Made by a program: the position numbers and the translations under genes. Below are positions 6,674 to 54,297 of a DNA stretch of 64,000 bases, piece after piece. The stretch is from the IMG/VR virus record IMGVR_UViG_3300036770_006296, positions 62,001 to 126,000 of that record; one strand, given 5' to 3'. The notes beneath the pieces are model-generated. The model saw only the letters and a program-made list of their open reading frames with translations, ran no database searches and was not told the origin of the DNA. Positions within the stretch are counted from its first letter, which is position 1. Every line of letters starts with the position of its first letter.

Positions 6674-7384
6674 ATGAAAGTTAAAAATTATAAGAACTTT
6701 ATAAAACTCCAAGAAGTTAGGAGAGAGAAAAAATGCCCCGTATTAAGTTTTAAACCAATTAGAGAATCTGAAACATATCAAGATATGATCGGAATGGGAT
6801 GGATCGAGGTACTAGCAGACAATCCTAAAGGAATTTTAGCATGGGCAACAGCAGAAGAAAGAAGTCATAAAGATAGAATGGGTAACATCGCATTCTATCA
6901 TCCGGTATTTCAAGGGAGAAGATTAACAAGAAGAGCAACCTCGAATGCACCGGAGGGATATCCACACTTTAATATAAAACACGACGGTGGAGTTAGAGTT
7001 GTTGAGGGTCTTCAAAACAGTGCTGAATTTCCAAGATTAACTACAGATCTAACAAGATCTTGTATGACTATTGAGGATTACCTTTACAAAATGAGTTTTT
7101 TAATAAAATATGCTATGAGAGAGCAAGGATTTCCTATCTCAGATAGCGAACTTTATGATAATGAATCCTACAAAGATCTTATAAAAAGAAAAATGCAGGA
7201 AGATCCAACAGTAATCAAACATTTCAAAGATGTAGATGTGCCTTCAGATCCTAGAGAAACAAGTATTGCTGGATCTGAAAAAATATACAAGCAAGTTTCA
7301 CTTCCTCCTAGTTTAAAAAAGGATGATCTAGGAAAAGGAGCTGCGATGTTGAAAAGATTTGGAGCATTCGGAGAAGATGAATAA
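6674..7384 (+). CDS. hypothetical protein, CTS-like N-term and C-terminal KG-tag
   Basis: MKVKNYKNFIKLQE...; ends KGAAMLKRFGAFGEDE; LP at 6649. Confidence 0.85.
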   Translation: MKVKNYKNFIKLQEVRREKKCPVLSFKPIRESETYQDMIGMGWIEVLADNPKGILAWATAEERSHKDRMGNIAFYHPVFQGRRLTRRATSNAPEGYPHFNIKHDGGVRVVEGLQNSAEFPRLTTDLTRSCMTIEDYLYKMSFLIKYAMREQGFPISDSELYDNESYKDLIKRKMQEDPTVIKHFKDVDVPSDPRETSIAGSEKIYKQVSLPPSLKKDDLGKGAAMLKRFGAFGEDE

Positions 7385-7401
7385 GGTTAGGGCTTAAAAC
7401 A

Positions 7402-8010
7402 ATGATAGAGATAACACAGATAATAGTAACCGGAATTTTTTCCGTAGTAGTGGCCTTTGGTACCGTTTGGTTAAAACACTATCTAGATAATAAAAAGAAA
7501 GCTACCGACGAAGAAAATTATGAGAGAATCTCACAGCAAGACATAGACTCTATGCTGGAAGTACAGGAATTTCTAGAAGATTTCAGAGAAAAATGGGGAT
7601 TCGACAGGGTAGGTATATTTCAATTTCATAATGGGGGTAAATTTTTTCACGGTATTCCGATGAAAAAATATTCACAGACCTTTGAATCAGTATCTCACGG
7701 GGTTTCTAAATCTAAGGAACATAATCAGGGCGTGTTTGTAACGGAACATCCATCTCTTATGAAACACTTAAGTGAGAAAGAATTCTTTCATGTTGATGCG
7801 GACGATCCAGTTCTTGACTATATAAGAGGAAGAGTAACAGAGGAAGGTATACTGCAGATATTTAGCTCTCCTATAAGAAGTCTTTCTGGACAACTAATTG
7901 GATTTATTCAGTTACACACTGTTAAGCACAAAGTGGATATGACGGATGAGCTAATAGTTGAGATAATAGATCTAGCTAATAATCTCTCCGGATATTTAAT
8001 AAAAAAATGA
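7402..8010 (+). CDS. single-TM + GAF-like protein, putative T4 gp t-type holin
   Basis: N-terminal TM (IIVTGIFSVVVAFGTVWL) then DRVGIFQFHNGG...SSPIRSLSGQLIGFIQL GAF-like strand pattern. Confidence 0.45.
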   Translation: MIEITQIIVTGIFSVVVAFGTVWLKHYLDNKKKATDEENYERISQQDIDSMLEVQEFLEDFREKWGFDRVGIFQFHNGGKFFHGIPMKKYSQTFESVSHGVSKSKEHNQGVFVTEHPSLMKHLSEKEFFHVDADDPVLDYIRGRVTEEGILQIFSSPIRSLSGQLIGFIQLHTVKHKVDMTDELIVEIIDLANNLSGYLIKK

Positions 8011-8429
8011 CAACAGAGTACGAGATAAATTTTTTTACCAAAGGAGAAGGGGAATTAGTTTTTACTCTTGGTATAGTAGGAGGCTCAAGAACTAAGCTTC
8101 TCTATAATATTATTACCCAGAATTGGGACCAGGGAGGATATTTCACCGTTGACGAAGATGATTGGAATGATATAGAATGGAATTTTTTAGATATAATTTG
8201 TGAGAATGTCCCTTATCATCATGAAGATCCAGATGGATATAATAAATTCATCTATAATTTAGAAATGCTTTGTGAATACAATCTTAATATAAGAGGAGCA
8301 ATATCAAAATATAATGCTGAAATAAAAGAAAAAGCTATCTTAGAAACGCTTTGTGGTTGTATACTAGAAAATTTCGATTACGAAGCGGCAGGAACTGAGG
8401 AATTTAAATTTAAGATACAAAAATTATGA
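8007..8429 (+). CDS. acidic hypothetical protein
   Basis: ATGA-coupled; paralog of next ORF (RTKLLYNIITQNWD vs RSNLLYNILNNQWD). Confidence 0.8.
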   Translation: MTTEYEINFFTKGEGELVFTLGIVGGSRTKLLYNIITQNWDQGGYFTVDEDDWNDIEWNFLDIICENVPYHHEDPDGYNKFIYNLEMLCEYNLNIRGAISKYNAEIKEKAILETLCGCILENFDYEAAGTEEFKFKIQKL

Positions 8430-8812
8430 TATACGAATTTAGATTTTCAGCAGAGGAGGATCCTGAGGTATACAAGATGGTAATAGAAGCAGATACTAGA
8501 TCTAATCTACTTTATAATATATTAAATAACCAATGGGATACGGAACAAATTTATTTTGATGATACCGAAATAATTCAGATTTTGGAGAACATCTTTGATA
8601 GATTAATGAATGCGGATCCAAGAACATATTCGGAAGATCTATATGATTTTTTAATGAGATGTCAATTTAAGCTTGATCTTAGAAGATTTTTAGGTGAAAA
8701 CAGCAATGAATCTTTACAAAGACTATTACATTTATTTGGAGAATGTGTTTGTAATATTTTTGACGAAGAATCTGGAGGTCTTGATTTCGAGTACGAATTC
8801 CTAGAAAGGTAA
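8426..8812 (+). CDS. acidic hypothetical protein, tandem paralog
   Basis: ATGA overlap; shared motif with 8007..8429. Confidence 0.8.
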   Translation: MIYEFRFSAEEDPEVYKMVIEADTRSNLLYNILNNQWDTEQIYFDDTEIIQILENIFDRLMNADPRTYSEDLYDFLMRCQFKLDLRRFLGENSNESLQRLLHLFGECVCNIFDEESGGLDFEYEFLER

Positions 8813-9043
8813 ATCCATAGCCATTAAGAATATGTGCTCCTTATTAGCATTATACATAGCCATTTTTTCTAACATCTCCTCTTTACTTAACTTGCTAAAT
8901 AAATAAGATTTATCCTCCACGATACATTCATGATCCTCGTCTCCCAGTGTATTATCCCACAATTCGTAGAAATATTTCAACGCATGGTCATATCCATATA
9001 CGAATTCTCGATTTCCCTCTAGTTGTATAACGTATCTACTCAT
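8801..9043 (-). CDS. hypothetical protein
   Basis: Coupled to the upstream DUF4326 gene. Confidence 0.7.
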   Translation of the reverse strand: MSRYVIQLEGNREFVYGYDHALKYFYELWDNTLGDEDHECIVEDKSYLFSKLSKEEMLEKMAMYNANKEHIFLMAMDLPF

Positions 9044-9402
9044 TATATTAATTGTTTTTGTTTGTTTTTAAGCTCGCTATTGAGATATTTTGCTAAGACT
9101 TGACCATGACAAAGGAAACTCTTTTCAGATCCGTCTGCGGGCTTATTACAACACCAACATCCCAATACTTTTCCCTTTAATTCATCGATATCTTTTATTA
9201 ACCCGCTTTCATTTAGATACTTTTCATATCCTTCTATAGCTTCTTTTCTAGAATCAACCTTAAATTTAGCTTGCGTCTTATCAAGATCTTTGTGTGTGTA
9301 AGGATTAGCCCACTTGCTAGGCCTTCCTATATACACATCATGGAAATATTTTTTAAAGTGGACCACATATGTTACTCCATCTATCCTTTCGAAATTCTCC
9401 AT
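9043..9402 (-). CDS. DUF4326 domain protein
   Basis: DVYIGRPSKWANPY...ELKGKVLGCWC...CHGQVL; EP on - strand ~9410-9445. Confidence 0.85.
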   Translation of the reverse strand: MENFERIDGVTYVVHFKKYFHDVYIGRPSKWANPYTHKDLDKTQAKFKVDSRKEAIEGYEKYLNESGLIKDIDELKGKVLGCWCCNKPADGSEKSFLCHGQVLAKYLNSELKNKQKQLI

Positions 9403-9446
9403 ATCACAAAGATAGTAAAATATAGATGTATAAAAAAATGATTCTT

Positions 9447-10256: not shown

Positions 10257-10805
10257 TTGATACTTCCCAATGAGATAAAATACAGATTCGTGAGTGACAT
10301 TGACGTCTCTCACTTAAAAGAAAAGATTATAGCCAATAATCTTGATTGGGATTCATATGATTTTAGACAATTAAGGTACAAGGACCACTCACAAACTAAG
10401 ACTATACCTCTTATATGGTCGGAAAATTTCAGTTCTCCGCAAAAATGGGATCCATATTATTCAATTTTTAAAGGGGATCTAGATAAAATAGAATTGATAA
10501 TAAGATCTTCCTTATGTAAAAGCGGAGATTTTATGAGTGCTATACTTATTAATCTTCCCGCTGGAAAATCTATAACAAGACACGTAGATGCAAATCCAAT
10601 AGGGGACAAGTTTAATAGGTGCCACAGAATACACATTCCTATAATAACAAACTCTGACTGTATATTTGAAATTGATGGAGAGGAGAAAAATATGAAGGAA
10701 GGAGAAATCTGGGAGATAAGCAACGTCAAGAAACCACATAGTGTACAAAACAAAGGTGCATCCGATCGGATACACCTCCTTATAGATTGGGATCCTTTTC
10801 TTTAA
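10257..10805 (+). CDS. aspartyl/asparaginyl beta-hydroxylase-like 2OG-Fe(II) oxygenase
   Basis: LPAGKSITRHVD...HRIHIPIIT...EGEIWEISNVKKPHSVQN...DRIHLLID (HxD...H triad). Confidence 0.85.
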   Translation: MILPNEIKYRFVSDIDVSHLKEKIIANNLDWDSYDFRQLRYKDHSQTKTIPLIWSENFSSPQKWDPYYSIFKGDLDKIELIIRSSLCKSGDFMSAILINLPAGKSITRHVDANPIGDKFNRCHRIHIPIITNSDCIFEIDGEEKNMKEGEIWEISNVKKPHSVQNKGASDRIHLLIDWDPFL

Positions 10806-11494
10806 TCTATTCCAAATCTCCTTAGCATAGATCCTCCTTTACCAGCTCTAACAAGGTCATCATACTCTTCAGGCGAAAGCTTAGCTCTAACTTTATCATC
10901 AACCCCAGAGATTGAAGAAGATGTATCCTTATACATCATAACCCCAGTTTTTGGGTTTTTATCTCTATATCCTTTTACTATGGTATCGGATAACACATCA
11001 GATAATTCTTGAGAAGTTGAATCGAGAGGATATATTTGCCCTGCTATTGCAATTTCATTATCTGAACCTCTTGAAATAACATAAACAACTCCTTCAGTCT
11101 CTATAGCTGCTTGCATGAAATCGTCGTGACATGAAGTACCCTCATAATCAAACACTCTATTCAATATATCGTCAGGATCTATACCAGGATTAGCTAGCAT
11201 TTCATATGAATTTCTGAAAACATCAAAACTTCCCCATTCATCGTAACAGTCTTCTTTAGAGCTCTTCTGACTTTCTTCCCAATCTGCATATGCTTCATCA
11301 TATTCTTCTGATGTTTCATAGTCATCCTCATCCGGCGCCTCATCCACATCGTAATCCCCCATATGCCATGCACTGTATCCGGATTCACAATAATCTTCAA
11401 CTAAAGTATCATAGTCAAGGGGTTCTTCACCATTGGTTGATTCCGGATATCCATAGTGTCCATCAGGAACGAATATAAACTTCTTTATTTTCAT
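10802..11494 (-). CDS. highly acidic protein with C-terminal KG-tag
   Basis: PDEDDYETSEEYDEAYADWEE; ends KGGSMLRRFGID; LP upstream. Confidence 0.85.
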   Translation of the reverse strand: MKIKKFIFVPDGHYGYPESTNGEEPLDYDTLVEDYCESGYSAWHMGDYDVDEAPDEDDYETSEEYDEAYADWEESQKSSKEDCYDEWGSFDVFRNSYEMLANPGIDPDDILNRVFDYEGTSCHDDFMQAAIETEGVVYVISRGSDNEIAIAGQIYPLDSTSQELSDVLSDTIVKGYRDKNPKTGVMMYKDTSSSISGVDDKVRAKLSPEEYDDLVRAGKGGSMLRRFGID

Positions 11495-12962: not shown

Positions 12963-13691
12963 TTAATATTCACCAAATCTCCTAAGCATTCTTGATCCCT
13001 TAAAAGCCTCTTCTGGTGTTTCTCCAAAGAATAATTTTATCCTGTCCTCTAGATGAGGATAAGCTTTTATAGTTCTATGTGCCACTATGGTGAATTCAGA
13101 GAAAGATGTTTTATCAAGAATGTCCTTCAACATAGTAACAATATCGTCATCCGAAACATCCCTTATTCCTATAATCAATTTCTCCTCGTGCTGGTAGTTG
13201 CTTCTTCTCTTGCCATTCCTGAAATTAATGGAATATATTCTACTTCTATTTGGATGATCAATATCTTCAAGGTCCGATGTTCCATAATCAAGCGCTCCAG
13301 TTTCATCTACCATTTCATCATATTCTCCCATACCACCACTCTGATAGAAATCATAAAAAGCCTCCATCTCATCGATGTCCATAAGCCTCCAATTAGTAGC
13401 AGATCCACTCAATGACTCTGGTGTGTTGTGCCAGTCTTTCCCGAGCAGGATCTTCTCTCCCTCGCTGACTTTTCTAAAAGTAAGCATCCCTGGAACAAGC
13501 ACAATCTTATTTCTAAAACGTGGATCGTCAACTAGAAAAACCTGATGCACTGCATAATCTTTATGAAAATTCGAATATTGACAAAGATCCACGGGGATTA
13601 TCCTTCCCATTTCTTTATCTGATAGATCCATTCTAGGGGATTTGTCTATTCCTTCACTTAACATTTCGTAGTATCCCTTGATGTGTTTCAT
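12963..13691 (-). CDS. hypothetical protein, CTS and C-terminal KG-tag
   Basis: MKHIKGYYEMLSE...; ends KGSRMLRRFGEY. Confidence 0.85.
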   Translation of the reverse strand: MKHIKGYYEMLSEGIDKSPRMDLSDKEMGRIIPVDLCQYSNFHKDYAVHQVFLVDDPRFRNKIVLVPGMLTFRKVSEGEKILLGKDWHNTPESLSGSATNWRLMDIDEMEAFYDFYQSGGMGEYDEMVDETGALDYGTSDLEDIDHPNRSRIYSINFRNGKRRSNYQHEEKLIIGIRDVSDDDIVTMLKDILDKTSFSEFTIVAHRTIKAYPHLEDRIKLFFGETPEEAFKGSRMLRRFGEY

Positions 13692-15252: not shown

Positions 15253-15600
15253 CTAAGCTCCTAATCTTTTAACCATCAATTTAAAGAGCCTCATACTATC
15301 AATTCCAGGTAGATCGGAATCCTGGGGATCATCAGTTCTAAACTCTTTAAGAATCACTTTCTGAATACCTTCGAACTCTGTGTCTTTTGGTATATCCCAA
15401 AAAGAGATGTAATATATGTTTATAAAATCTCCCCTAAAAGTGACTCTTGGCGGAATATGAAGTACACCGCTTATGTATAGAACATTATATAAGCCTCGCT
15501 TTTTCGTAACGGGGACGGATACTACTATTCTATCATCAATCAGATCTGCTCTATACCCAAGCTCCTCAATTTCACCCAAGAATTTCTTTGTCACATTCAT
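15253..15600 (-). CDS. terminal member of LRR-20 array; conserved ends, non-LRR core
   Basis: KKFLGEIEELGY...GIDSMRLFKLMVKR. Confidence 0.8.
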   Translation of the reverse strand: MNVTKKFLGEIEELGYRADLIDDRIVVSVPVTKKRGLYNVLYISGVLHIPPRVTFRGDFINIYYISFWDIPKDTEFEGIQKVILKEFRTDDPQDSDLPGIDSMRLFKLMVKRLGA

Positions 15601-16040
15601 AAAAATACCCCTTGTTTAACCATAAGCTTAAATAATCTCTTGGTGTGTATATCATCTATAGATCCTTCCCATGATTCACCCCAATCACCAGATGTGCTAA
15701 ACATATATGTTCCACCCCTTTGATACCCAAGCATAATCTTACTCTTTCCGTTATTGAAAACAGTGGAGGGATGTATCTTAATACCTTGGTCGTATAATCC
15801 CAAAACAATATTGCCACCATTGTTAAATTGAACACCCTCAGGAATCTCCTGTAGCTCCGTTAGATGAACATTACCCTTGTTATTAAAGATAACACCAGAA
15901 GGCAGAGACTTTAAGTGATTAATGCCCACGTTCCACTTGTAAGCAAGCCCATTAGATCCAGTGATCTCAATCTCGTTGCCCAAGATATTATAAGTGATCT
16001 TATCACTATCTAACTGTTCTATAAATTCTTCCCTTGTCAT
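15597..16040 (-). CDS. LRR-20 array protein, ~3 degenerate repeats
   Basis: MTREEFI...LPSGVIFNNKG...KRLFKLMVKQGVFL. Confidence 0.85.
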   Translation of the reverse strand: MTREEFIEQLDSDKITYNILGNEIEITGSNGLAYKWNVGINHLKSLPSGVIFNNKGNVHLTELQEIPEGVQFNNGGNIVLGLYDQGIKIHPSTVFNNGKSKIMLGYQRGGTYMFSTSGDWGESWEGSIDDIHTKRLFKLMVKQGVFL

Positions 16041-16504
16041 ATAAATAAGCCTCTTTTAATCATCAAGTTCAATAACCTCTTACTATCTATTCCCTCTATG
16101 TTACCTTCCCAATTTTTAAACCATACAACATAATTCCCCATTAATGACTCCAAATAGACACTCCCTTCATTCTTAAACTCCACACCAGGCGGAAGGGTTT
16201 TTAATGAGTCCAAATAGACACTCCCTTCATTCTTAAACTCCACACCAGGAGAAATGGTTTCTAATGAGTTCAAATAGACACCCCCTTCATTCTTAAACTC
16301 CACACCAGGAGGAAGGGTTTTTAATGAGCTCAAATAGACATTCCCTCCATTCTTAAACTCCACACCAGAAGGAAGGGTTTCTAATAATGAGTTCAAAAAG
16401 ACAGTCCCATTCCTATCTCCTCTAGTCACCACTAGCTTATCTCCTTTTATCTCGTAGGAGTAACCTTCCTTATCTAACTTCTTTATAAACTTTTCTTGTG
16501 TCAT
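16037..16504 (-). CDS. LRR-20 array protein, 4 repeats
   Basis: VxLxSLxTLPPGVEFKNEG units at 60-bp period. Confidence 0.9.
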   Translation of the reverse strand: MTQEKFIKKLDKEGYSYEIKGDKLVVTRGDRNGTVFLNSLLETLPSGVEFKNGGNVYLSSLKTLPPGVEFKNEGGVYLNSLETISPGVEFKNEGSVYLDSLKTLPPGVEFKNEGSVYLESLMGNYVVWFKNWEGNIEGIDSKRLLNLMIKRGLFI

Positions 16505-16947
16505 ATAAATAAGCCTCTTTTAATCATCACGTTCAATAACATCTTACTATCGATACCTTCTATGTTACCAGTCCATGTATAAATCCATCCTCTGATTAGT
16601 GATTCCAAATAGACACCACCTTCATTCTTAAACCCCACACCAGGGGAAATACTAGTTAGTGATCTCAAACTGACATATCCCTCATTATTAAACTCCATAC
16701 CAGATGGAAGACTAGTTAGTGAATCCAACCAGAGATCCCCTACATTCTTAAACTCAATACCAGGAGGAAGTGTAGTTAATGAGTTCAATTCGACATATCC
16801 TTCATTCCTAAACACCACATCAGAAGGAAGACTATCTAGTAATCTCAAATCGACCCACCGTTTATGATTAATAACTATCTTATCTCCTTCTATCTTGTAG
16901 GAGTAACCTTTCTCTTCTAATATCTCTATAAATTCTTCTCTTGTCAT
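16501..16947 (-). CDS. LRR-20 array protein, 4 repeats
   Basis: Same N-cap, repeats and C-cap; ATGA overlaps. Confidence 0.9.
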   Translation of the reverse strand: MTREEFIEILEEKGYSYKIEGDKIVINHKRWVDLRLLDSLPSDVVFRNEGYVELNSLTTLPPGIEFKNVGDLWLDSLTSLPSGMEFNNEGYVSLRSLTSISPGVGFKNEGGVYLESLIRGWIYTWTGNIEGIDSKMLLNVMIKRGLFI

Positions 16948-19444: not shown

Positions 19445-19471
19445 ATAAATAATATGTTTTAATATATTTCA

Positions 19472-26459: not shown

Positions 26460-27269
26460 ATGAAATTATTTGATGAACGCCAGGTGAAGATGATGAAATA
26501 TCTTTCCTCTGGACTTCCACCACAGAGTAGATGGCGGTACAATCCGGTAACAGACCTTATAGATATAGAGGGGGATTTCAATTGTGGATGGACGGGTTTT
26601 AAAGATTTTAGAGGAGTTAAATTTGGAAAGATCACTGGACATTTCGATTGTTCCGGTATAGGACTCACCAGTTTAATAGGAGCTCCTGAAGAGGTCGGAA
26701 AAGATTTCAATTGTTCGAAAAACAATTTAACTAGTCTTGAAGGTGCACCTAAAAAGGTTGGTTATAGTTTCAATTGTTCAAAAAACTCTCTAGAAAGCCT
26801 AGAAGGAGGTCCTGAATATGTTAGGGGAAATTATGATTGTTCGAGTAATAAGCTCGTTACTCTTAAAGGATCCCCTAAAGCTTTACGCAGGGGGAGTAAA
26901 TTTATTTGCTCCAATAATCTTTTAAAAGATTTAAACGGGTTAATAGATAATGATTTTATGGGATTTTTTACATGTAAACGCAATCCCCTTACTAGTCTGG
27001 AAGGAGCACCAATCAACATAGAACCTTATTGGGATGGAAGTTATGAAGGAAAAATTTCATATTATGGAAATAAAGGTGTTTCGGGAAAGGTGCTCGAATT
27101 AATTCATCTCACGATGATTGAAAAGAAAGTGCCATTTATTATCGCTCTAGGTATTCTTAAGAACGAGATAAAATCGAGCGATCTTAAGAAGCTACTTCCT
27201 TCGGATCAGGAGAACGTAGAAGATGTACTAAAAGGAGCTAGCATGTTAGCTAAATTTGAATCTTTCTAA
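26460..27269 (+). CDS. LRR-21 family protein with KG-tag
   Basis: FNCSKNNLTSLEGAPKKVG repeats; ends KGASMLAKFESF. Confidence 0.88.
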   Translation: MKLFDERQVKMMKYLSSGLPPQSRWRYNPVTDLIDIEGDFNCGWTGFKDFRGVKFGKITGHFDCSGIGLTSLIGAPEEVGKDFNCSKNNLTSLEGAPKKVGYSFNCSKNSLESLEGGPEYVRGNYDCSSNKLVTLKGSPKALRRGSKFICSNNLLKDLNGLIDNDFMGFFTCKRNPLTSLEGAPINIEPYWDGSYEGKISYYGNKGVSGKVLELIHLTMIEKKVPFIIALGILKNEIKSSDLKKLLPSDQENVEDVLKGASMLAKFESF

Positions 27270-28764: not shown

Positions 28765-29256
28765 ATGGCAACAAGGAGTAGAATAGGAATAGTAAACGAG
28801 GACGGAACAGTTTCCTCAATATATTGTCACTGGGACGGATACGTATCTCACCACGGTCCACTCTTACTTACGCATTATACAGACCGTGAAAAGGTTAAAG
28901 CCCTTATCGAATTGGGAAGTATTAGTGTCTTAGCTCAACACGTTGAGCCGCCTTCAGTCGTTGACGAGAATGATATCGATGGTAAGAAGGGTGAGAGGAT
29001 GCTTAAGAGATTTGGAGTCATAGGAAAACATTCTTTCTACGATCCACTACCAGGTGTTACTGTTGCTTATCATCGAGACAGAGGAGAGGAATACATCAAA
29101 CCGAGAATTAATAAGTCGCTAGAGGATTATTTTCTAGCAGACAATGAAGAATATGGCTACGTCTTTACCCTTGAGGGTGAATGGCTAGTCAAGTCGGGGT
29201 ACAACGAAAGTGCTCCAATTAGACCAATCGCTGAGGTTTTAGCAGAAGAAACTTAG
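28765..29256 (+). CDS. conserved phage protein (TRSxIG...YCHWDGY) with internal KG-tag
   Basis: ...DGKKGERMLKRFGVIG... Confidence 0.8.
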   Translation: MATRSRIGIVNEDGTVSSIYCHWDGYVSHHGPLLLTHYTDREKVKALIELGSISVLAQHVEPPSVVDENDIDGKKGERMLKRFGVIGKHSFYDPLPGVTVAYHRDRGEEYIKPRINKSLEDYFLADNEEYGYVFTLEGEWLVKSGYNESAPIRPIAEVLAEET

Positions 29257-33150: not shown

Positions 33151-33867
33151 ATGAAAATACTAGGATTTAATTTCCTTACTCTAAGACAGATAATATTTTT
33201 AAACGAGTTCACTTATGGCAAGTGGACTCTTAACAAGAAGACTGGACTGGTCGATATAGAAGGAGATTTCAATTGTTCAGATAAAAAATTAACCGGCTTT
33301 AAAGGTGTTCGGTTTGGAGTGGTTACTGGGAGTTTCTATTGTTACGATAACAATCTCACAAGTCTTGAGGGAGCGCCACAAAAGGTTGGATGGTATTTCG
33401 ATTGCTCCCATAACTCTCTCACAAGTCTTGAGGGAGCGCCACAGAATGTTGGGAGGGATTTCCGTTGCTACAATAACAAGCTCACAAGTCTTGAGGGAGC
33501 GCCGCAGAAGGTTGGATGGAGTTTCTATTGCCCATATAACAGGCTCACAAGTCTTGAGGGAGCGCCACAGGAGGTTGGAGGGTGTTTCTATTGCTACAAT
33601 AACTCTCTCACAAGTCTTGTGGGAGCGCCACAGGAGGTTGGAGGGAGTTTCGATTTCTACGGTAATCCGATCTCAGAGAAGACGTTAAAGTTGGTATGGG
33701 AGACGATGAGAGATAATAAGATCGACTATTGGTTTGCTTTATCGATACTTAAGAGCCAGATCGAGAGTGAGGATTGGAAGAAGATGTCTATAGGCTTAGA
33801 CGAGAGATTATCTAAAGACGCTCTGAAGGGTATTTCAATGATGGATCGGTTTGGACATTTTGATTAG
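33151..33867 (+). CDS. LRR-21 family protein with KG-tag
   Basis: 63-bp repeats FxCxxNxLTSLEGAPQxVG; ends KGISMMDRFGHFD. Confidence 0.9.
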   Translation: MKILGFNFLTLRQIIFLNEFTYGKWTLNKKTGLVDIEGDFNCSDKKLTGFKGVRFGVVTGSFYCYDNNLTSLEGAPQKVGWYFDCSHNSLTSLEGAPQNVGRDFRCYNNKLTSLEGAPQKVGWSFYCPYNRLTSLEGAPQEVGGCFYCYNNSLTSLVGAPQEVGGSFDFYGNPISEKTLKLVWETMRDNKIDYWFALSILKSQIESEDWKKMSIGLDERLSKDALKGISMMDRFGHFD

Positions 33868-39292: not shown

Positions 39293-39889
39293 ATGCCTGG
39301 AATATTAATGGATCTAAGAAAATTAACGGAATACCAACCTTGGTTATTTAGAAACAAACACATGCAGCCAGTTATGGAAGCTCTTATGGAAGCACGTATA
39401 AATATCTTTAAGGACGAGGTACTATCCTCATTGAAAGGAGGTGATTCACTAACCGAGGATCAGATACGTATACTAGCCCTTTCTACCGATGCTTCTATTC
39501 ACATTAGGAAGGATGGAAAGATTAACGTGAATGGAATTTTTAACTGCTCTGGATTAGGACTAACTGATTTGTGTGGACTTCGATTTGGTAGAGTAAAAGG
39601 AAGATTTATTTGCAGAAATAATTCTATAACAAATCTTGAAGGGTTTCCTATTGAGGGAGATCCGGAGGTATTCTTTGACAGAAACAAAGGTATATCCGAC
39701 GGAACCTTAGATCTTATATTTGAAGCTATGAGAAAGAACCAAATGGACTATTGGTCGGCTTTATGTGTTGTTAAAAGCGAGATAGACTCTAAAGAATGGG
39801 TTGTTATGTCTAAAGGGATAGACGAGAGACTTTCACAAGACGCTCAGAAGGGAGCTTCGATGTTGGGACGATTTGGACATTTTGATTAA
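39293..39889 (+). CDS. minimal LRR-21 family member with KG-tag
   Basis: 1-2 repeats; ends KGASMLGRFGHFD. Confidence 0.85.
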   Translation: MPGILMDLRKLTEYQPWLFRNKHMQPVMEALMEARINIFKDEVLSSLKGGDSLTEDQIRILALSTDASIHIRKDGKINVNGIFNCSGLGLTDLCGLRFGRVKGRFICRNNSITNLEGFPIEGDPEVFFDRNKGISDGTLDLIFEAMRKNQMDYWSALCVVKSEIDSKEWVVMSKGIDERLSQDAQKGASMLGRFGHFD

Positions 39890-39929: not shown

Positions 39930-40688
39930 ATGGAACTTAATAAAGAACAAATAGAATTTTTAAACGGGTTTACTAAAGGCAAATGGACTCTTAACAAGAA
40001 GACCGGACTAGTTGATATAGAGGGTTATTTTGATTGTTCATGTGAAGAATTAACCGATTTTAAAGGTGTTCGGTTTGGAGTGGTTACTGGGAGTTTCAAT
40101 TGCAGCGGTAACAATCTCAAAAGTCTTGAGGGAGCGCCACAAGAGGTTGGACTGGGTTTCGATTGCGACAATAACAATCTCAAAAGTCTTGTGGGAGCGC
40201 CACAGAAGGTTGGAGATTATTTCAATTGTTACTGGAACAAGCTCACAAGTCTAGTGGGAGCGCCACAAGAGGTTGGAGGGATTTTCGATTGTTCCAGTAA
40301 CAAGCTCACAAGTCTAGTGGGAGCGCCACAAGAGGTTGGAGAGATTTTCGATTGTTCCTATAACAAGCTCACAAGTCTAGTGGGAGCGCCACAGAAGGTT
40401 GGGCGTTTCGATTGTTGCTATAATAAGCTCACAAGTCTAGAGGGAGCGCCACAGAAGGTTGGGGAGGGTTTCTATTGCTACAATAACCCAATCTCGGAGA
40501 ATACTCTGAATTTAGTGTGGAACACTATGCAAGAAAAAAAGATCGACTACTGGTCGGCTTTATGTATTCTTAAGAGTGAAATCTCAAGGAGTGATTTCGA
40601 GAATTTAGAGGGAGAGTTGGAAAAGAGACTTTCACAAGACGCTCAGAAGGGGGTTTCTATGTTGGGACGGTTTGGACATTTTGATTAA
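39930..40688 (+). CDS. LRR-21 family protein with KG-tag (start corrected)
   Basis: ~6 repeats; ends KGVSMLGRFGHFD. Confidence 0.9.
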   Translation: MELNKEQIEFLNGFTKGKWTLNKKTGLVDIEGYFDCSCEELTDFKGVRFGVVTGSFNCSGNNLKSLEGAPQEVGLGFDCDNNNLKSLVGAPQKVGDYFNCYWNKLTSLVGAPQEVGGIFDCSSNKLTSLVGAPQEVGEIFDCSYNKLTSLVGAPQKVGRFDCCYNKLTSLEGAPQKVGEGFYCYNNPISENTLNLVWNTMQEKKIDYWSALCILKSEISRSDFENLEGELEKRLSQDAQKGVSMLGRFGHFD

Positions 40689-42563: not shown

Positions 42564-42728
42564 CTTGTAAGTAGGTAAAAAGATTAGGCTTCCTTATGGA
42601 AGCCTTTTTTGTGTGGTAAATCCTAGGGTCTGCATGGAGATGCACTGGGGAACCCCAGGAAGTTTGAGCAGGAATCATTTTTTTCTTCATGTAGAATTTT
42701 CTACATTTGTATTGTAACCAATTACAAT

Positions 42729-44182: not shown

Positions 44183-44512
44183 ATGAAAGATAAGGATATA
44201 CTAGCGAGAATAAAAGAACTATCAAATGAAGATTGGTTCCAGAACGGTGATGATTCACCGGAAGAGGTCTACGAGGAGCTTTACGGGATAGAAGCTGAAA
44301 ACGATGATCTTGCATATCTTCTCGAGTTAACTATTGGTGGACCGGGATACTCGGATGTTTGGCTTTCACGAGGTGTACTTATAGGAGATGTGCTTGCTTA
44401 CGGAGATGGATTAGAAGAGGGTGAGGAAGTTACTGAGGATGATATCTACGAAGATAATCAAATGTTTATTGCGGAAAGAAGAATGGGTTTACTTGATGAA
44501 ATAATTTTGTAA
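44183..44512 (+). CDS. highly acidic protein
   Basis: E/D-rich. Confidence 0.75.
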   Translation: MKDKDILARIKELSNEDWFQNGDDSPEEVYEELYGIEAENDDLAYLLELTIGGPGYSDVWLSRGVLIGDVLAYGDGLEEGEEVTEDDIYEDNQMFIAERRMGLLDEIIL

Positions 44513-45372
44513 TGGGATTAACTAAAGATCAAATAGAATGGCTAAATAGCTGCCACGGATGGGCTGGTCTAAAAAAGACTAAATGGACATTTAACGAAGA
44601 AACCGGACTAGTAGACGTAGAGGGTGATTTTATAACCCCCAATTCATATGGTTCTTGTAAAGCTTTAGGACGGAAAGGAGGTGGTGGATATGGAGGTATT
44701 AAGGATTTTATGGGTATTAAATTCGGTACTGTTACTGGGACCTTCGATTGCTCGTATAACAATCTAACAAATATAGAGGGAGCGCCTATTTACGTAGGAG
44801 GGGATTTCGATTGCTCATATAACAAACTCACAAGCTTAGTGGGAGCACCACAAGAAGTTGGAGGTTCCTTCAGTTGTATAGATAATAATCTCACAAGTCT
44901 TATTGGATCTCCTCGAAGGGTTAAGCTTCACTTCCACTGTGCTTATAACAAACTACCAAATCTAGTAGGAGCTCCTATGTACGTGGGAGGGGATTTCTGG
45001 TGCACTGATTTATCCAATGATCTACATATAGAAAGTCTGCACGGAGCAGAAGAATGTATAATAGGTGGAGATTTCGATTGTCATTACAACAAATTGAAAG
45101 ATTTAAAAGGTGCTCCTAGATTAATTTACGGTCAATTTATGGTCTATGGTAATTACGAAGGAAATTACAAAAGAGTTAAAAAAGATACATTCATTCTAAT
45201 AACTAGTACAATGAAAGAAAAAAATCTAGACTATTTTGGCGCTTTGTGCTTATTAAAAGATTCCCTCGATAAGAAGGAATGGAATAAGTTATCTAAAGGT
45301 ATAGACGAAAGATTGTCGAAAGAAGCCCAGAAGGGTCTTAGAATGTTGGACAAGTTTAAAATTTTTGAATAA
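44512..45372 (+). CDS. LRR-21 family protein with KG-tag
   Basis: GDFDCSYNKLTSLVGAP repeats; ends KGLRMLDKFKIFE. Confidence 0.9.
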   Translation: MGLTKDQIEWLNSCHGWAGLKKTKWTFNEETGLVDVEGDFITPNSYGSCKALGRKGGGGYGGIKDFMGIKFGTVTGTFDCSYNNLTNIEGAPIYVGGDFDCSYNKLTSLVGAPQEVGGSFSCIDNNLTSLIGSPRRVKLHFHCAYNKLPNLVGAPMYVGGDFWCTDLSNDLHIESLHGAEECIIGGDFDCHYNKLKDLKGAPRLIYGQFMVYGNYEGNYKRVKKDTFILITSTMKEKNLDYFGALCLLKDSLDKKEWNKLSKGIDERLSKEAQKGLRMLDKFKIFE

Positions 45373-45432
45373 ATCATTTTTTTCTTTATGTAGAATTTTC
45401 TACATTAGCTGTGTAACCAAATAAAAAATAAT

Positions 45433-46045: not shown

Positions 46046-46588
46046 ATGGAGAACACACAAGAAGAAAACGCGAGAAAAGGTGAAGCGATGCTAACCAAAT
46101 TCGGAGTAATTAAAAAAATCGGGGTTTATTGCTACGATGTTACAATAGAGAATCATAATGGAGCGGTAGGTACAATATCGAGTGAAGAGGAGCAATTAAT
46201 CATAATCGGTATTAACGAAGAATCTTTAGAAGAGAGAACTAAGGAAGAACACTACGAAGACGATGGATTCATGAGATCAACTACATATTCCTTAGTATTC
46301 AAAGAAGAAGGTTGGACCTCCGACGAGGTCATGGAAAGATTTAATCTAAGCGAATATGAGATAGAGGAAATCCTAGATGGGGAAAACCTTGAATTAGATG
46401 ATTGGGACTTAAGAGATACATATTATTTTGATGAGTGTAAGCTCTCAATTAAAGAGTTAAGGGAGAAAAGAAAGATCGATTCAGAACCTTTCGATGCCGA
46501 CGAGATCATAAGCAAGATTGCTAGCGAGTATGTTCTTACTACAAGAAGAAAAGCATCGCTTGTTAAAAGTATTAAAAAATTATCCTAA
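46046..46588 (+). CDS. acidic protein with N-terminal KG-tag
   Basis: ARKGEAMLTKFGVI; ends paralogous to 47778. Confidence 0.85.
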   Translation: MENTQEENARKGEAMLTKFGVIKKIGVYCYDVTIENHNGAVGTISSEEEQLIIIGINEESLEERTKEEHYEDDGFMRSTTYSLVFKEEGWTSDEVMERFNLSEYEIEEILDGENLELDDWDLRDTYYFDECKLSIKELREKRKIDSEPFDADEIISKIASEYVLTTRRKASLVKSIKKLS

Positions 46589-47777: not shown

Positions 47778-48260
47778 ATGAAGAGCACACAAGAAGAAAA
47801 CGCTAGAAAAGGTGAAGCGATGCTAACAACATTTGAGGTAATTAAAAAAATATACGTATCACCATATATTATTGAAGGCGAGGATGAGCGGGAAATACAT
47901 GTAGTATTATTAGGTGCTAAGGAAGAAGATTTAGAAGATTTTTTCGAAAGAAATGATGACGATGCTGATATCATTGGTACGCCTGAAATTATAGAGATGC
48001 TGCGATCAGAGGCAGAAGAAAGGTACGGGAAGGATCGGATAGAATATATTTTAGGAGCAAGAGATGGATACGTTGATTGGATTCACGGTGAGAATATTTT
48101 TGTCGAAACTCTGATGCCCATAGAAGAATTAAGAGAAAAAAGAAGAATTGAGTCTGAGCCTTTCGATGCTGAGGAGATCATAAGAAAGATTGCTAGCGAA
48201 TATGTTATTACCCAGAGAAGAAAAGAATCGCTTATTGAAATTATAAATAAATTACTCTAG
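47778..48260 (+). CDS. acidic protein with N-terminal KG-tag
   Basis: ARKGEAMLTTFEVI. Confidence 0.85.
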   Translation: MKSTQEENARKGEAMLTTFEVIKKIYVSPYIIEGEDEREIHVVLLGAKEEDLEDFFERNDDDADIIGTPEIIEMLRSEAEERYGKDRIEYILGARDGYVDWIHGENIFVETLMPIEELREKRRIESEPFDAEEIIRKIASEYVITQRRKESLIEIINKLL

Positions 48261-52006: not shown

Positions 52007-52152
52007 GAATTCAGAAGAACCCTGGAAAAGGAGCCATTGGCTCCTTTTTTTGTGACCAAAACCTATGGCTGTCCTATTCTTCTCTGGGGAACCCCAGGAA
52101 GTTTGATCAGGAATCATTTTTTAGTTTCCATAGAATTCGCTACATTTACCAC

Positions 52153-52530: not shown

Positions 52531-52593
52531 AAATCATTTTTTTCTTTGTAGAAAATTCTATATATTAGCTAAGTAACCAATTAAATAAAATAA

Positions 52594-52851: not shown

Positions 52852-52874
52852 AATTAGGAATCATTTTTTTTAAG

Positions 52875-53051
52875 GTGAAACAGATAGAACAAGCTAAAAC
52901 AATTTTAGAATCCCACGACATACTCGATGGCAGGGATTATATAATTTCCCTACAAGGACCGACAGTGATACTAACCATAGAAGGTAAGACTAAAATCACT
53001 CCGCAGATAATTGACGAATTAATTCCCACAGGTGTAGGCGTAATGCTTTAA
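52875..53051 (+). CDS. 58-aa ORF behind a truncated EP (GTG start)
   Basis: AATCATTTTTTT runs straight into the ORF without a -7 element; terminator follows. Confidence 0.4.
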   Translation: MKQIEQAKTILESHDILDGRDYIISLQGPTVILTIEGKTKITPQIIDELIPTGVGVML

Positions 53052-53253
53052 AGTTATGGGATTTTTTTATTTAAATAAAGCCAGCCTTAGAGCTGGTTTT
53101 TTTGTGGATCTTAGAAATCAACTAGGCAGATCTAGATGCACTGGGGAACCCCAGGAAGTCTGATCCAACTTAACCTATAGGTTTATTTTCAGAAATCATT
53201 TTTTTCTTTGTAGAAAAATCTATATATTAGCTAAGTAACTAAATAAACAGAGA

Positions 53254-53490
53254 ATGAAGAAGGGAGATAGAATTAAGGTGACATTTACCAAAGACACATT
53301 ACTAGTTGTATACCCAAAGTCAGACAAGCGTTATAGGGAAGGGTGTGAAGAAATGTTTTTGGAGGGACAAACATTAGAATTTGAGATCTTAGAAATCAAG
53401 AACGAAGGTGAGACTATAGAAGTTAAATTTCTTAGCGAGCTTTATTCAATCCATTACATGGGAGTTATAAGTAATATTATTTTTGTTTGA
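53254..53490 (+). CDS. hypothetical protein
   Basis: EP upstream; 3' end overlaps an inverted gene. Confidence 0.6.
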   Translation: MKKGDRIKVTFTKDTLLVVYPKSDKRYREGCEEMFLEGQTLEFEILEIKNEGETIEVKFLSELYSIHYMGVISNIIFV

Positions 53491-53662
53491 GTTCTTCAAT
53501 AAAATTCAATATACTTTCCTCACCATCAATTGTTTTAACCGAGTCATCTAGATAAATAACAACAATTCTTGGCGGTAAATCGTTCTCCATAAATGATTGA
53601 ATTTTTTCTATTCCTTTAGCATCTAATATTGTTTCATCAATATCTTTTAAATAATCTTTCAT
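53477..53662 (-). CDS. hypothetical protein in inverted cassette
   Basis: Own TATATTTG promoter (~53711-53718, - strand) and A-rich leader. Confidence 0.7.
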   Translation of the reverse strand: MKDYLKDIDETILDAKGIEKIQSFMENDLPPRIVVIYLDDSVKTIDGEESILNFIEELKQK

Positions 53663-53931
53663 AATTTTCTTTTTTAATTGTTAAACAAAAATAATACATA
53701 CTTATAACAACAAATATAAGAAATAAATCTTACTTTGTCTATTTTTTAATGAAAAGATTTACTTCTCATATTTGCAACCGATAAAACTTTTTTATTCCCT
53801 TCTGGGTTTAAAAATAATGATACGCATGGGAGAAGACAGTATTTTAAAATTATCTAAAATCCCAAGGAATCATTTTTTTCTTTAGATAGAATTTTCTACA
53901 TTTGTATCGTAACCACTAAAAAATAAAAAAA

Positions 53932-54297
53932 ATGGATAATCAAGAAGAAGAAAACATAAGGAAGGGCAAAAGTATGCTAGTAAAATTTGGGGTGATTGAT
54001 CCCAGATTAGATAGAGCTGTTAGGAAATATTATAATGGAAGAAGATCAAACGATTCAGCTTTTGATGATATTTTTGAATTCTATTACGATAAAGGAGACC
54101 TTTCAGCCGCGGGTATAACTATAGCGGAGTACGATGAATTAGATTGGAATCCTAGCGTCAGTGTACGAGCGCAGGTTGTAAACTGTGCAGAGCTTGATGA
54201 TGAATTATTTGATTATCTAAGAGGTATTGTAGATCCTGATTGGTACGATGATGACGATGATGACGATGATGACGATGATGACGATGACGGATGGTAG
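53932..54297 (+). CDS. acidic protein, N-terminal KG-tag, poly-Asp tail
   Basis: IRKGKSMLVKFGVI...YDDDDDDDDDDDDDGW. Confidence 0.85.
   Translation: MDNQEEENIRKGKSMLVKFGVIDPRLDRAVRKYYNGRRSNDSAFDDIFEFYYDKGDLSAAGITIAEYDELDWNPSVSVRAQVVNCAELDDELFDYLRGIVDPDWYDDDDDDDDDDDDDDGW

What the first reader, a model, noticed from the sequence alone, without database searches (positions are those of the whole stretch)
6674..54297. Portable KGxxMLxRFG tag on 12 proteins of several unrelated families, at C-terminal, N-terminal and internal positions
Seen: C-terminal in 6674 (KGAAMLKRFG), 10802 (KGGSMLRRFG), 12963 (KGSRMLRRFG) and all five LRR-21 proteins. N-terminal in 46046, 47778 and 53932 (KGEAMLTKFG, KGEAMLTTFE, KGKSMLVKFG). 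Internal in 28765 (KGERMLKRFG). The carriers otherwise fall into unrelated families and include both CTS/late and early genes. Established: the E. coli MinD membrane-targeting helix reads KKGFLKRLFG. Inference: an address label sending many phage proteins to one place, either the inner membrane as an amphipathic helix or a shared hub protein (e.g. the AAA+/vWA machine or a host complex). I know of no description of this motif.
Basis: partly seen in the sequence, partly recalled or inferred. Interest (0 to 1): 0.85.

Follow-up and report, generated by a model that had tools for sequence, protein, structure and literature searches.

The report
Portable peptide tag on phage proteins
An uncultured jumbo phage attaches the same ten-residue helical tag (KGxSMLxRFG) to the start, end or a surface loop of at least 15 otherwise unrelated proteins. 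The tag changes in step across all carriers in related phages, so it looks like a new address or docking label whose receptor is still unknown.

Summary
All 12 ORFs carry KG..M[LM]..F in frame, against 0.02 expected. A position matrix gives them 32-46 bits; the best score in shuffled proteins is 11.9.

Walking the source contig (206.6 kb, IMG/VR) found three more carriers, making 15 in the 120 kb examined.

- **Unrelated carriers.** With the tag masked they fall into about 8 families.
- **Protein-level selection.** Synonymous sites at the conserved codons are saturated.
- **Portability.** About half of the 28765 homologues lack the roughly 23-residue insert that holds the tag, and some 46046 homologues lack the N-terminal module.
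- **Predicted structure.** AlphaFold2 makes the tag a short helix ending in Phe-Gly.
- **Genome-specific dialects.** Related phages use ML..RF, LL..R[S/C/V/F], TL..QF or NG..[LVI]L. These are shared by N-terminal, internal and C-terminal tags on different families, and positions 5 and 9 covary.

This pattern favours a docking helix read by one co-evolving receptor over a generic MinD-like membrane anchor, which stays the main rival. The receptor was not identified. The motif is essentially absent from other viral contigs and from 185,579 prokaryotic genomes. I found no published description. I rate it a new variant of a known kind (portable targeting peptides), of high interest.

The parts
6674..7384 (+). 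Carrier 1 (236 aa, no family hit). C-terminal tag KGAAMLKRFG at 7334-7363, six residues before the stop. Late-type promoter box and an MKVKNYKNF N-terminus.
   Evidence: Pfam and PHROGs empty
10802..11494 (-). Carrier 2 (230 aa, very acidic). C-terminal tag KGGSMLRRFG at 10811-10840, two residues before the stop.
12963..13691 (-). Carrier 3 (242 aa). C-terminal tag KGSRMLRRFG at 12972-13001.
26460..27269 (+). Carrier 4, an LRR protein (269 aa). C-terminal tag KGASMLAKFE at 27231-27260. Its orthologue in relative L017 (2182-2973) ends KGASLLGRFS.
28765..29256 (+). Carrier 5 (163 aa, phrog_1987 family). Internal tag KGERMLKRFG at 28987-29016, inside a roughly 23-residue insert (about 28954-29022) that many homologues lack. 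The insert is predicted as helix 71-82.
33151..33867 (+). Carrier 6, an LRR protein (238 aa) lying between the two vWA paralogues. C-terminal tag KGISMMDRFG at 33826-33855.
39293..39889 (+). Carrier 7, a short LRR protein (198 aa). C-terminal tag KGASMLGRFG at 39848-39877.
39930..40688 (+). Carrier 8, an LRR protein (252 aa). C-terminal tag KGVSMLGRFG at 40647-40676. In the AF2 model (pLDDT 95.4) the tag is the last helix, 236-247.
44512..45372 (+). Carrier 9, an LRR protein (286 aa). C-terminal tag KGLRMLDKFK at 45331-45360.
46046..46588 (+). Carrier 10 (180 aa). N-terminal tag KGEAMLTKFG at 46076-46105. Homologues show other dialects or lack the tag.
47778..48260 (+). Carrier 11 (160 aa, paralogue of carrier 10). 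N-terminal tag KGEAMLTTFE at 47808-47837.
53932..54297 (+). Carrier 12 (121 aa, ends in a poly-Asp run). N-terminal tag KGKSMLVKFG at 53962-53991. It shares only the 22-residue N-terminal module with carriers 10 and 11.

Best explanation
The tag is a portable docking helix of about 12-14 residues. Its form is A-x-K-G-x-S-M-L-x-R-F-G-x-hydrophobic, usually preceded by an acidic, hydrophobic-poor stretch. It can be fused to either terminus of a protein or inserted in a surface loop. One receptor that co-evolves with it reads it and so gathers a varied set of phage proteins at one partner or place.

The carriers are of two kinds:
- products of the block of genes behind host-type promoters, inferred to be early;
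- late gene products whose N-termini resemble the T4 capsid-targeting sequence, inferred to be packaged and injected.

The common denominator would then be action at the start of infection.

**Shown:** the motif, its statistical excess, its portability, protein-level selection, the predicted helix, and the genome-specific dialects with position 5-9 covariation.

**Inferred:** that the constraint is a protein receptor, and the timing of action.

**Unknown:** what the receptor is, and whether it is encoded by the phage or the host.
For: 1. **Excess and specificity.** 12 sites against 0.02 expected, with a clean score gap. There are 15 carriers in the 120 kb of the contig examined.
2. **Unrelated carriers.** Tag-masked all-against-all BLASTP leaves the five LRR proteins, the 46046/47778 pair and singletons. 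The only weak link is 6674 with the 335-aa carrier.
3. **Portability.** 28765 orthologues in L002 and L017 lack the 23-residue insert. Of the 120 homologues listed, 59 carry a tag-like insert, while the shorter proteins (about 123-146 aa) lack it. Some 46046 homologues start after the tag. 53932 shares only the N-terminal module.
4. **Old and selected.** Same-codon fractions at K1, G2 and L6 (0.47, 0.34, 0.21) match codon-usage expectation (0.53, 0.33, 0.22).
5. **Helix.** AF2 places the tag in helix 71-82 of 28765, with pLDDT 73-82 against 92-99 for the core. In the LRR protein it is the last helix, 236-247.
6. **Dialects.**
   - This phage: Met at position 5 in 15 of 15 tags.
   - L148 and L153: ML.
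   - L017, L002 and L155: LL in 8 of 8 tags. These sit on LRR proteins, on a DUF8033 protein and on the N-terminus of a 46046 homologue.
   - L140: TL..QF on two LRR orthologues.
   - L154: NG or MG with [LVI]L.
   - Orthologous pairs show that the tags predate the split of these lineages: 26460/L017_2182, 46046/L155_10001, 39293/L140_2763, 33151/L140_327, and L153_9175 with L017_3030.
7. **Covariation.** Across three carrier families, position 5 = M goes with F at position 9 in 82 of 83 cases. Position 5 = L goes with S, C, N or V in 12 of 12.
8. **Not a common host motif.** 35 pattern matches in 2.9 million viral contigs, and 14 unconfirmed matches in 596 Gb of prokaryotic genomes.
Against: - No receptor was found, and no binding or localisation was tested.
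- Dialect uniformity rests on few independent lineages. The LL genomes are related to each other, so the number of independent switches is small.
- L5 with F9 does occur: L017 KGASLLGRFS, two tags in L155, and L164 and L162. The covariation is therefore not absolute.
- The tag resembles the MinD membrane helix in sequence and hydrophobic moment.
- The high pLDDT of the LRR tail could mean that the helix packs on its own domain.
- 'Early' and 'packaged' are inferred only from promoter motifs and N-terminal motifs.
Confidence: 0.5

Rival explanations
1. The tag is a membrane-targeting amphipathic helix of the MinD, FtsA or MreB type. It sends the carriers to the inner membrane, or to a lipid compartment, with no protein receptor.
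For: - The E. coli MinD tail EEEKKGFLKRLFGG shares an acidic run, then K-G, then hydrophobic-L-K-R, then F-G with, for example, 6674 and 28765.
- The tags' hydrophobic moment is 0.23-0.57, against 0.39 for MinD, and their net charge is mostly +1 to +3.
- The tag is predicted helical.
- Membrane-targeting sequences are known to be transplantable and to occur at either terminus (PMC8155659 and the references cited there).
Against: - Lipid binding needs only amphipathicity. Here K1, G2, M5 and F9 are invariant on 14 of the 15 carriers (the 15th, KGARMLGRFG, also fits) despite saturated synonymous sites.
- Whole genomes switch M to L or T, R to Q, and F to S or C together.
- The TL..QF dialect has a moment of 0.08-0.19 and a charge of 0 to +1. 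The LL..RS tags lose the Phe.
- A single MinD-type helix is too weak to hold a monomer on the membrane (PMC8155659).
Confidence: 0.2
2. The tag is a recognition tag for an AAA+ machine. Candidates are one of the phage's two MoxR-type ATPases with their vWA or DUF2201 partners, or a host unfoldase or protease. Tagged proteins would be remodelled, activated or degraded on schedule. Alternatively, the LRR carriers would act as adaptors that bring bound targets to the machine.
For: - An LRR-tag gene lies between the two vWA paralogues next to the MoxR gene, both here and in L140.
- The 335-aa carrier lies two genes after a second MoxR and DUF2201 cluster.
- The LRR fold is a target-binding module in its nearest solved relatives.
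- Short terminal tethering peptides for unfoldases are established biology (my own knowledge, not tested here).
Against: - The synteny is not constant: L153, L154, L002 and L017 have no LRR gene between the vWA genes.
- Phages sharing only the AAA+ and vWA genes (54-70% identity) show no tags within 10 kb on either side.
- There is no direct evidence of interaction.
Confidence: 0.12
3. The tag is a cargo-loading peptide for a protein shell. The shell would be the phage's own HK97-type procapsid or some other phage-built compartment. The tag would work like encapsulin targeting peptides or microcompartment encapsulation peptides.
For: - Encapsulin peptides carry a conserved G-S-L followed by Arg or Lys anchors, for example PLTVGSLRRGG (PMC7925596). 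That resembles G-x-S-M-L-x-R.
- Microcompartment peptides are short amphipathic helices at the N- or C-terminus of unrelated enzymes, set off by a linker (PMC4594438).
- Several carriers are late genes.
Against: - Nine carriers lie in the block of host-type promoters, inferred to be early.
- The late carriers already have a T4-CTS-like N-terminus.
- No shell, encapsulin or microcompartment gene was met in the 120 kb examined. The capsid genes lie in the unseen part of the contig.
- The tag is predicted helical, whereas encapsulin peptides bind in an extended form.
Confidence: 0.08
4. The tags bind one another as homotypic sticky helices. Tagged proteins would then co-assemble or condense without a separate receptor, and mutual compatibility would also force concerted dialects.
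For: - Concerted change across all tags of a genome is expected under this model too.
- The residue pattern A1-G4-L8-F11 is heptad-like.
- Microcompartment encapsulation peptides can drive condensation (PMC12339742, abstract).
Against: A 12-residue helix present once per protein gives little avidity, and nothing predicts oligomers. This model was not tested.
Confidence: 0.06
5. The repeat is a nucleic-acid signal or an artefact. Either it is a DNA or RNA element that merely translates to this peptide (the codons AARGGN-N6-ATG look like a Shine-Dalgarno site plus start codon), or it is a leftover of common descent.
For: - The K-G-x-x-M codons inevitably read A-A-R-G-G-N, six bases, then ATG.
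- The last residues and stop codon of the LRR tags overlap the conserved upstream flank (TTTGAT.A..AATCA) of the next promoter.
- TTT-GGA is somewhat over-used at F9-G10.
Against: - Synonymous positions vary freely at K, G and L.
- Conservation extends to L6, R8, F9 and G10.
- The LL and TL dialects have no ATG at that position.
- The tags occur on both strands and far from any promoter, as in 28765 and the N-terminal cases.
- The carriers are unrelated once the tag is masked.
Confidence: 0.02

Closest known systems
MinD-type C-terminal membrane-targeting sequence (E. coli ...KKGFLKRLFGG)
   Same: Both are short basic amphipathic helices after an acidic run, with K-G at the start and F-G at the end. 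Both are transplantable, and their hydrophobic moments are similar (PMC8155659).
   Different: - The tag is not on a MinD or ParA ATPase.
- It also occurs at N-termini and inside folds.
- The spacing between K-G and F-G differs by one residue.
- Residue identities are fixed within a genome and switch together between genomes.
- Some dialects are barely amphipathic.
Bacterial microcompartment encapsulation peptides
   Same: These are amphipathic helices placed at the N- or the C-terminus of unrelated proteins. They are set off by a poorly conserved hydrophilic linker and read by a common shell protein (PMC4594438). This is the closest functional analogue of a portable address helix.
   Different: - Those peptides are about 17-18 residues long and have almost no sequence conservation, whereas this tag is shorter and sharply conserved.
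- No microcompartment shell genes were seen.
- The carriers are phage proteins of unknown function, not metabolic enzymes.
Encapsulin cargo-targeting peptides (G-S-L ... R/K)
   Same: Both are short terminal peptides with Gly/Ser, Leu and a basic anchor. Encapsulin peptides bind the interior of an HK97-fold shell, and phage capsids share that fold (PMC7925596).
   Different: - Encapsulin peptides are mainly C-terminal and bind in an extended form; this tag is predicted helical.
- The cargo gene sits next to the shell gene.
- Most carriers here lie in the block inferred to be early.
Phage T4 capsid-targeting sequence (CTS) of internal proteins
   Same: It is a roughly 10-residue peptide that suffices to address foreign proteins to a phage structure (PMC9958956).
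   Different: The T4 CTS is strictly N-terminal and its sequence is unrelated. This phage has a separate CTS-like N-terminal motif (MKxIKxFExF) on many late genes, and several carriers have both motifs.
Selective protein import into the chimallivirus phage nucleus (PicA/Imp1)
   Same: It is a jumbo-phage system that sorts many phage proteins to one destination.
   Different: [quoted passage not shown] No chimallin or PicA gene was looked for or seen here.
Sliding-clamp binding motifs (bacterial QL[SD]LF, PIP box, T4 polymerase tail)
   Same: These are short hydrophobic peptides found at N-terminal, C-terminal or internal positions of many proteins that share one hub.
   Different: The tag has no Gln and a different pattern. 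The phage's own family-B DNA polymerase ends ...NLLLVRALF and has no tag. The carriers are not replication proteins.

Membership tests
MinD-type membrane-targeting sequence | Sits at the extreme C-terminus of a MinD/ParA-family ATPase | tested here: not met
   No carrier has an ATPase or any Pfam domain apart from weak LRR hits. Three window tags are N-terminal and one is internal; one further carrier outside the window also has a non-terminal tag.
MinD-type membrane-targeting sequence | Amphipathic alpha-helix with a basic flank | tested here: inconclusive
   The tag is predicted helical. Its moment is 0.23-0.57 against 0.39 for MinD, but only 0.08-0.19 in the TL..QF dialect.
MinD-type membrane-targeting sequence | Only physico-chemical character is conserved; residues are interchangeable | tested here: not met
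   K, G, M and F are invariant within the genome despite saturated synonymous sites. Dialect switches are genome-wide and positions 5 and 9 covary.
MinD-type membrane-targeting sequence | Binds phospholipid bilayers directly | not testable with these tools
   This needs liposome co-sedimentation or localisation of GFP fusions.
T4-type capsid-targeting sequence | N-terminal peptide of about 10 residues on proteins of the scaffolding core, removed by the prohead protease | tested here: not met
   Ten of the 15 tags are C-terminal. The sequence is unrelated. A different CTS-like N-terminal motif is present on late genes (PMC9958956).
Encapsulin targeting peptide | C-terminal peptide with a G-S-L core and basic anchor, on a cargo gene next to an encapsulin shell gene | tested here: inconclusive
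   G-x-S-[ML]-L-x-R is reminiscent of it (PMC7925596). However, no shell gene lies next to any carrier, N-terminal and internal copies exist, and the tag is predicted helical. The unseen 40% of the contig was not checked.
Microcompartment encapsulation peptide | Amphipathic helix of about 17-18 residues at the N- or C-terminus, with a poorly conserved linker, in a locus with BMC shell genes | tested here: inconclusive
   The helix, the terminal placement and the hydrophilic upstream stretch (27% acidic against 16% overall) all fit. No shell genes were seen in the proteins scanned. The tag is shorter and much more conserved than these peptides (PMC4594438).
Sliding-clamp binding motif | Present on the replicative polymerase and other DNA enzymes; consensus QL[SD]LF or a PIP box | tested here: not met
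   The C-terminus of the family-B polymerase fragment (L146 2834-4003) has no tag, and neither do the topoisomerase subunits. The tag contains no Gln.
Leucine-rich repeat proteins (five of the carriers) | Solenoid of 20-29-residue repeats with the LxxLxLxxN/C pattern | tested here: met
   The DNA has a 63-nt period. The AF2 model has pLDDT 95.4 with a strand every 21 residues. Foldseek gives probability 1.00 to short-repeat bacterial LRR domains.

The most novel reading that the evidence does not exclude
The tag is a linear sorting signal for a previously unknown destination that this clade of Bacteroidota-type jumbo phages sets up at the start of infection. That destination could be a phage-built compartment, scaffold or hub. 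It would collect both injected virion proteins and the first proteins made, and the genome-specific dialects would reflect co-evolution with a phage-encoded receptor. This would be the first short, transplantable 'zip code' for protein sorting described in a phage. It would contrast with the surface-patch recognition used by nucleus-forming phages.
Probability: 0.2. Interest if true: 0.92.

Novelty: new variant of a known kind. Interest (0 to 1): 0.8.

Why it matters
Short portable address peptides are known for bacterial microcompartments, encapsulins, the T4 head and membrane anchoring. I found no description of a phage that labels a large, mixed set of its proteins with one sharply conserved tag at either terminus or in a loop.

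If the tag docks on one receptor, it defines a functional set of at least 15 proteins of unknown function, including a five-member LRR family. It also gives a direct handle for finding the hub they serve: a peptide bait, and a tag that could carry reporters.

The dialects provide a natural specificity experiment, and the tag could become a small transplantable targeting module. Finally, the case shows that short linear motifs can be found in uncultured phage genomes from sequence alone.

Tried and rejected
- **DNA similarity to 50,697 phage records:** no match. The nearest cultured relative of the AAA+ protein is only 38-41% identical.
- **Pfam and PHROGs on the carriers:** no function found.
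- **Alignment-based motif scans:**
  - The viral scan gave only pattern counts, because the tblastn confirmation step rejects short matches.
  - The second gave 14 unconfirmed matches.
- **Clamp-binding hypothesis:** rejected, because the polymerase tail has no tag.
- **The conserved ...FFYRTGII C-terminus of the protein at about 35611-36063:** I considered it a degenerate thirteenth tag. I rejected this because it stays identical in genomes whose tags have changed dialect.
- **Shine-Dalgarno plus ATG reading of the KGxxM codons:** rejected (see the rival explanations).
- **PDB sequence search with the tag profile:** the only hit was a chance match to the ArgR recognition helix, SRMLTKFG, E = 1.3.
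- **Foldseek of the 28765 model:** no significant fold match.
- **Presence/absence profile around the AAA+ gene, used to look for a receptor:** too many clade-specific genes to choose among.
- **Walking downstream through Logan contigs:** this stalled, and IMG/VR walking was used instead.
- **Literature searches for such a motif in phages:** nothing found.

Full report
**Source.** The window is bases 62,001-126,000 of IMG/VR contig IMGVR_UViG_3300036770_006296 (JGI Ga0310126_0000076, 206,617 bp, 37% G+C). This is an uncultured jumbo phage.
- It has no DNA match among 50,697 deposited phages.
- It encodes a sigma-70 family factor, a MoxR-type AAA+ ATPase and two vWA paralogues.
- Outside the window it encodes topoisomerase subunits, a family-B polymerase, ribonucleotide reductase, a J-domain protein and a second MoxR and DUF2201 cluster.
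- A Bacteroidota host is likely. The repeated promoter ends in TAnnTTTG, and one homologue sits in a MAG labelled Bacteroidetes.

**The observation.** All 12 ORFs carry the motif in frame at the stated places.
- The six-frame count of KG..M[LM]..F is 12, against a mean of 0.02 in shuffles.
- A 14-column matrix scores the sites at 32-46 bits. The next best site in the window is below 12 bits, and the best site in shuffled proteins is 11.9.
- The aligned consensus is A-x-K-G-x-S-M-L-x-R-F-G-x-F, with K, G, M and F invariant.
- Tags sit 2-6 residues from the C-terminus, at residues 11-20 from the N-terminus, or inside the protein.
- The 12 residues before the tag are enriched in Asp and Glu (27% against 16% overall) and depleted in hydrophobic residues.

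**More carriers.** I walked the contig with exact-protein look-ups and IMG/VR scans and covered 25.3-145.5 kb. This found three more carriers, making 15 in 120 kb:
- a 335-aa protein ending KGASMLSRFGLF (L146 8944-9951);
- a 169-aa protein with the tag at residues 42-51, about 370 bases past the window end (L151 11037-11546);
- a 298-aa protein ending KGARMLGRFGVI (L168 16368-17264).

**Selection acts on the protein, not the DNA.** Codons at the conserved residues differ freely. The fraction of tag pairs using the same codon at K1, G2 and L6 (0.47, 0.34, 0.21) equals what genome codon usage predicts (0.53, 0.33, 0.22). The tags are therefore old and are kept by purifying selection. They are not copies spread by recent duplication or gene conversion. 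Two minor DNA effects exist. TTT-GGA is somewhat over-used at F9-G10, and the last residues and stop codon of the LRR tags overlap the conserved upstream flank of the next promoter.

**The carriers are unrelated.** With the tag masked, BLASTP links only the five LRR proteins and the 46046/47778 pair. 6674 and the 335-aa carrier share a weak similarity just before the tag. That leaves about eight families.
- The LRR assignment is solid. The DNA has a 63-nt period, the AF2 model has pLDDT 95.4, and Foldseek gives probability 1.00 to short-repeat bacterial LRR domains.
- 28765 belongs to a family widespread in T4-like cyanophages, vibriophages and jumbo phages. Its fold has no match in the PDB.

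**Portability.**
- The closest 28765 orthologues (L002 and L017, 50-52% identical) lack a 23-residue insert that holds the tag.
- Of the 120 homologues listed from the 5.8-billion-protein collection, 59 carry a tag-like insert at that spot. The shorter proteins (about 123-146 aa) lack it.
- In the 46046 family, most homologues have the N-terminal tag, some start just after it, and others have different extensions.
- 53932 shares only the 22-residue N-terminal module with that family.

**Structure.** In the 28765 model (pLDDT 92.6) the insert forms helix 71-82. Its confidence is lower (73-82) than that of the core (92-99), and it is flanked by coil. In the LRR model the tag is the last helix, 236-247, and the final residues are coil. 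The pattern A1, G4, L8, F11, with M7 beside them, forms one face of the helix. Phe-Gly caps the helix.

**Dialects.** This is the most informative result.

| Genomes | Dialect | Carriers |
|---|---|---|
| This phage | Met at position 5 in all 15 tags | all carrier families |
| L148 (176-kb ENA contig), L153 | ML | LRR, 46046 homologue, DUF8033, 28765 insert |
| L017, L002, L155 | KGxSLLxR followed by F, V, S or C, in 8 of 8 tags | three LRR proteins, an unrelated DUF8033 protein, the N-terminus of a 46046 homologue |
| L140 | KGY[SL]TLxQF | two LRR proteins orthologous to 33151 and 39293 |
| L154 | NG or MG with [LVI]L | three carriers |

- The orthologous pairs show that several tags already existed in the common ancestor, so the tags of one genome have changed together.
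- Across cluster representatives of three carrier families, M at position 5 goes with F at position 9 in 82 of 83 cases. L at position 5 goes with S, C, N or V in 12 of 12 cases.
- The locus data contain exceptions with L5 and F9.
- Positions 5 and 9 lie on the same face of the helix.
- This behaviour is what a peptide shows when it is read by one co-evolving pocket. Lipid binding does not predict it.

**Distribution.**
- The pattern KGx[SAR]MLx[RK]F[GE] occurs in only 35 stretches of 2.9 million IMG/VR contigs, and nine of those matches lie in this window alone.
- A related pattern has 14 unconfirmed matches in 596 Gb of genomes from 185,579 prokaryotic species. I therefore see no sign that the phage copies a common host motif.
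- Phages that share only the AAA+ and vWA genes (54-70% identity) show no tags or LRR genes near them.

**Expression classes.**
- About 55 copies of AATCATTTTTTT-N8-TAGAATTTTCTACATTTG (or ...ATTAGCTA) precede the plus-strand genes between 21 and 60 kb. These include the sigma factor, the MoxR and vWA genes and nine carriers. I read this as a host-sigma, early class. That is an inference.
- Genes outside the block often have GGATA[TA]ATAA 10-25 bases before the start codon, like the T4 late box. Many of their N-termini follow MKxIKxFExF, like the T4 capsid-targeting sequence. Carriers 6674, 10802, 12963 and L168_16368 are among them (PMC9958956).
- If those late proteins are packaged and injected, both carrier classes are present at the very start of infection. 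This timing argument is inference only.

**Mechanism.**
- Best supported (0.5): a docking helix read by one co-evolving receptor, encoded by the phage or the host.
- Main rival (0.2): a MinD-like membrane helix. The resemblance is real. Against it stand the fixed residues, the dialects, the poorly amphipathic TL..QF form, and the known weakness of a single such helix (PMC8155659).
- Lesser readings:
  - a tether or degron for an AAA+ machine (0.12), for which synteny is suggestive but inconsistent;
  - a shell-loading peptide like those of encapsulins or microcompartments (0.08; PMC7925596, PMC4594438);
  - self-associating tags (0.06);
  - a nucleic-acid signal (0.02).
- A clamp-binding role is rejected, because the polymerase tail lacks the tag.
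- The receptor could not be identified. Too many clade-specific genes co-occur with the tags, and no tool for predicting complexes was available.

**Novelty.** Portable targeting peptides are a known kind of device, but I found no description of this motif or of a phage using one tag so widely. In nucleus-forming jumbo phages, cargo is reported to be chosen by folded surface residues and not by a terminal signal (PMC12908238). I class the finding as a new variant of a known kind, with interest 0.8.

**Limits.**
- Forty per cent of the contig was not seen.
- The dialect evidence comes from a handful of related lineages.
- All functional statements are inferred.

Noticed in passing
window 21100-60122 (+), e.g. 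39230-39266, 45372-45408: About 55 copies of a promoter roughly 45 bp long sit in front of nearly every gene of a 40-kb plus-strand block. The promoter reads AATCATTTTTTT-N8-TAGAATTTTCTACATTTG, or ends ...ATTAGCTA. The end matches the Bacteroidota -7 box TAnnTTTG. Two sub-types (ATTTG and ATTAGCTA) may mark two timing classes.
   Followed up: partly
window 866, 2988, 6674, 9819(-), 63335; L146 4075, 5565, 8944, 14333; L151 and L168, many genes: Many genes outside the promoter block begin MKxIKxFExF / ...F[IV]NE (one begins MIQHYEEFIAE). Many of them have GGATA[TA]ATAA 10-25 bases upstream. This resembles the T4 capsid-targeting sequence together with the T4 late promoter box. The peptide MKHIKLFE alone helped give 506 pattern matches in IMG/VR.
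   Followed up: partly
window 15253-20056 (-): An array of eight tandem paralogous genes (115-231 aa) is built from 60-nt (20-residue) repeats. This is a second repeat-protein family, distinct from the 21-residue LRR family, and none of its members carries the tag.
   Followed up: no
window 31434-32984 and 33932-35440 (+): Two paralogous vWA proteins flank an LRR-tag gene. Both have a shared N-terminal SGWE.SH[FY]GG[FY] motif, long Gly/Glu/Lys low-complexity linkers (12-nt repeats) and an identical ...VV[KR]AEFK end.
   Followed up: partly
window about 35611-36063 (+): A 150-aa protein next to the second vWA gene ends ...DAFFYRTGII. This C-terminus is nearly invariant in all relatives, even where the tag dialect has changed. 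It may be a second, different docking tail.
   Followed up: partly
window 53932-54297 (+): The N-terminally tagged 121-aa protein ends in a run of 13 Asp followed by Gly-Trp, which is reminiscent of acidic interaction tails.
   Followed up: no
window e.g. 33074-33090, 39200-39216, 42643-42659, 52082-52098: The hairpin CTGGGGAACCCCAG, followed by GAAGTTTGATCAGG, recurs just upstream of many block promoters. It is probably a shared terminator and spacer cassette between genes.
   Followed up: no
window 37021-37236 (+): A 71-aa protein is 72-94% identical across all tag-bearing relatives. It is the most conserved gene of the neighbourhood, and its function is unknown.
   Followed up: no
L146 4075-7567 (contig about 47.7-51.2 kb) and L156 7086-8048: There is a second MoxR-type AAA+ gene, with a CTS-like N-terminus, followed by a DUF2201 (vWA-like) gene. 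About 6 kb upstream of that AAA+ gene lies a J-domain (HPD) protein.
   Followed up: no
window 28765-29256 (+): The phrog_1987 family is widespread in T4-like cyanophages, vibriophages and jumbo phages. It gives a confident AF2 model (pLDDT 92.6) with no significant fold match in the PDB.
   Followed up: partly
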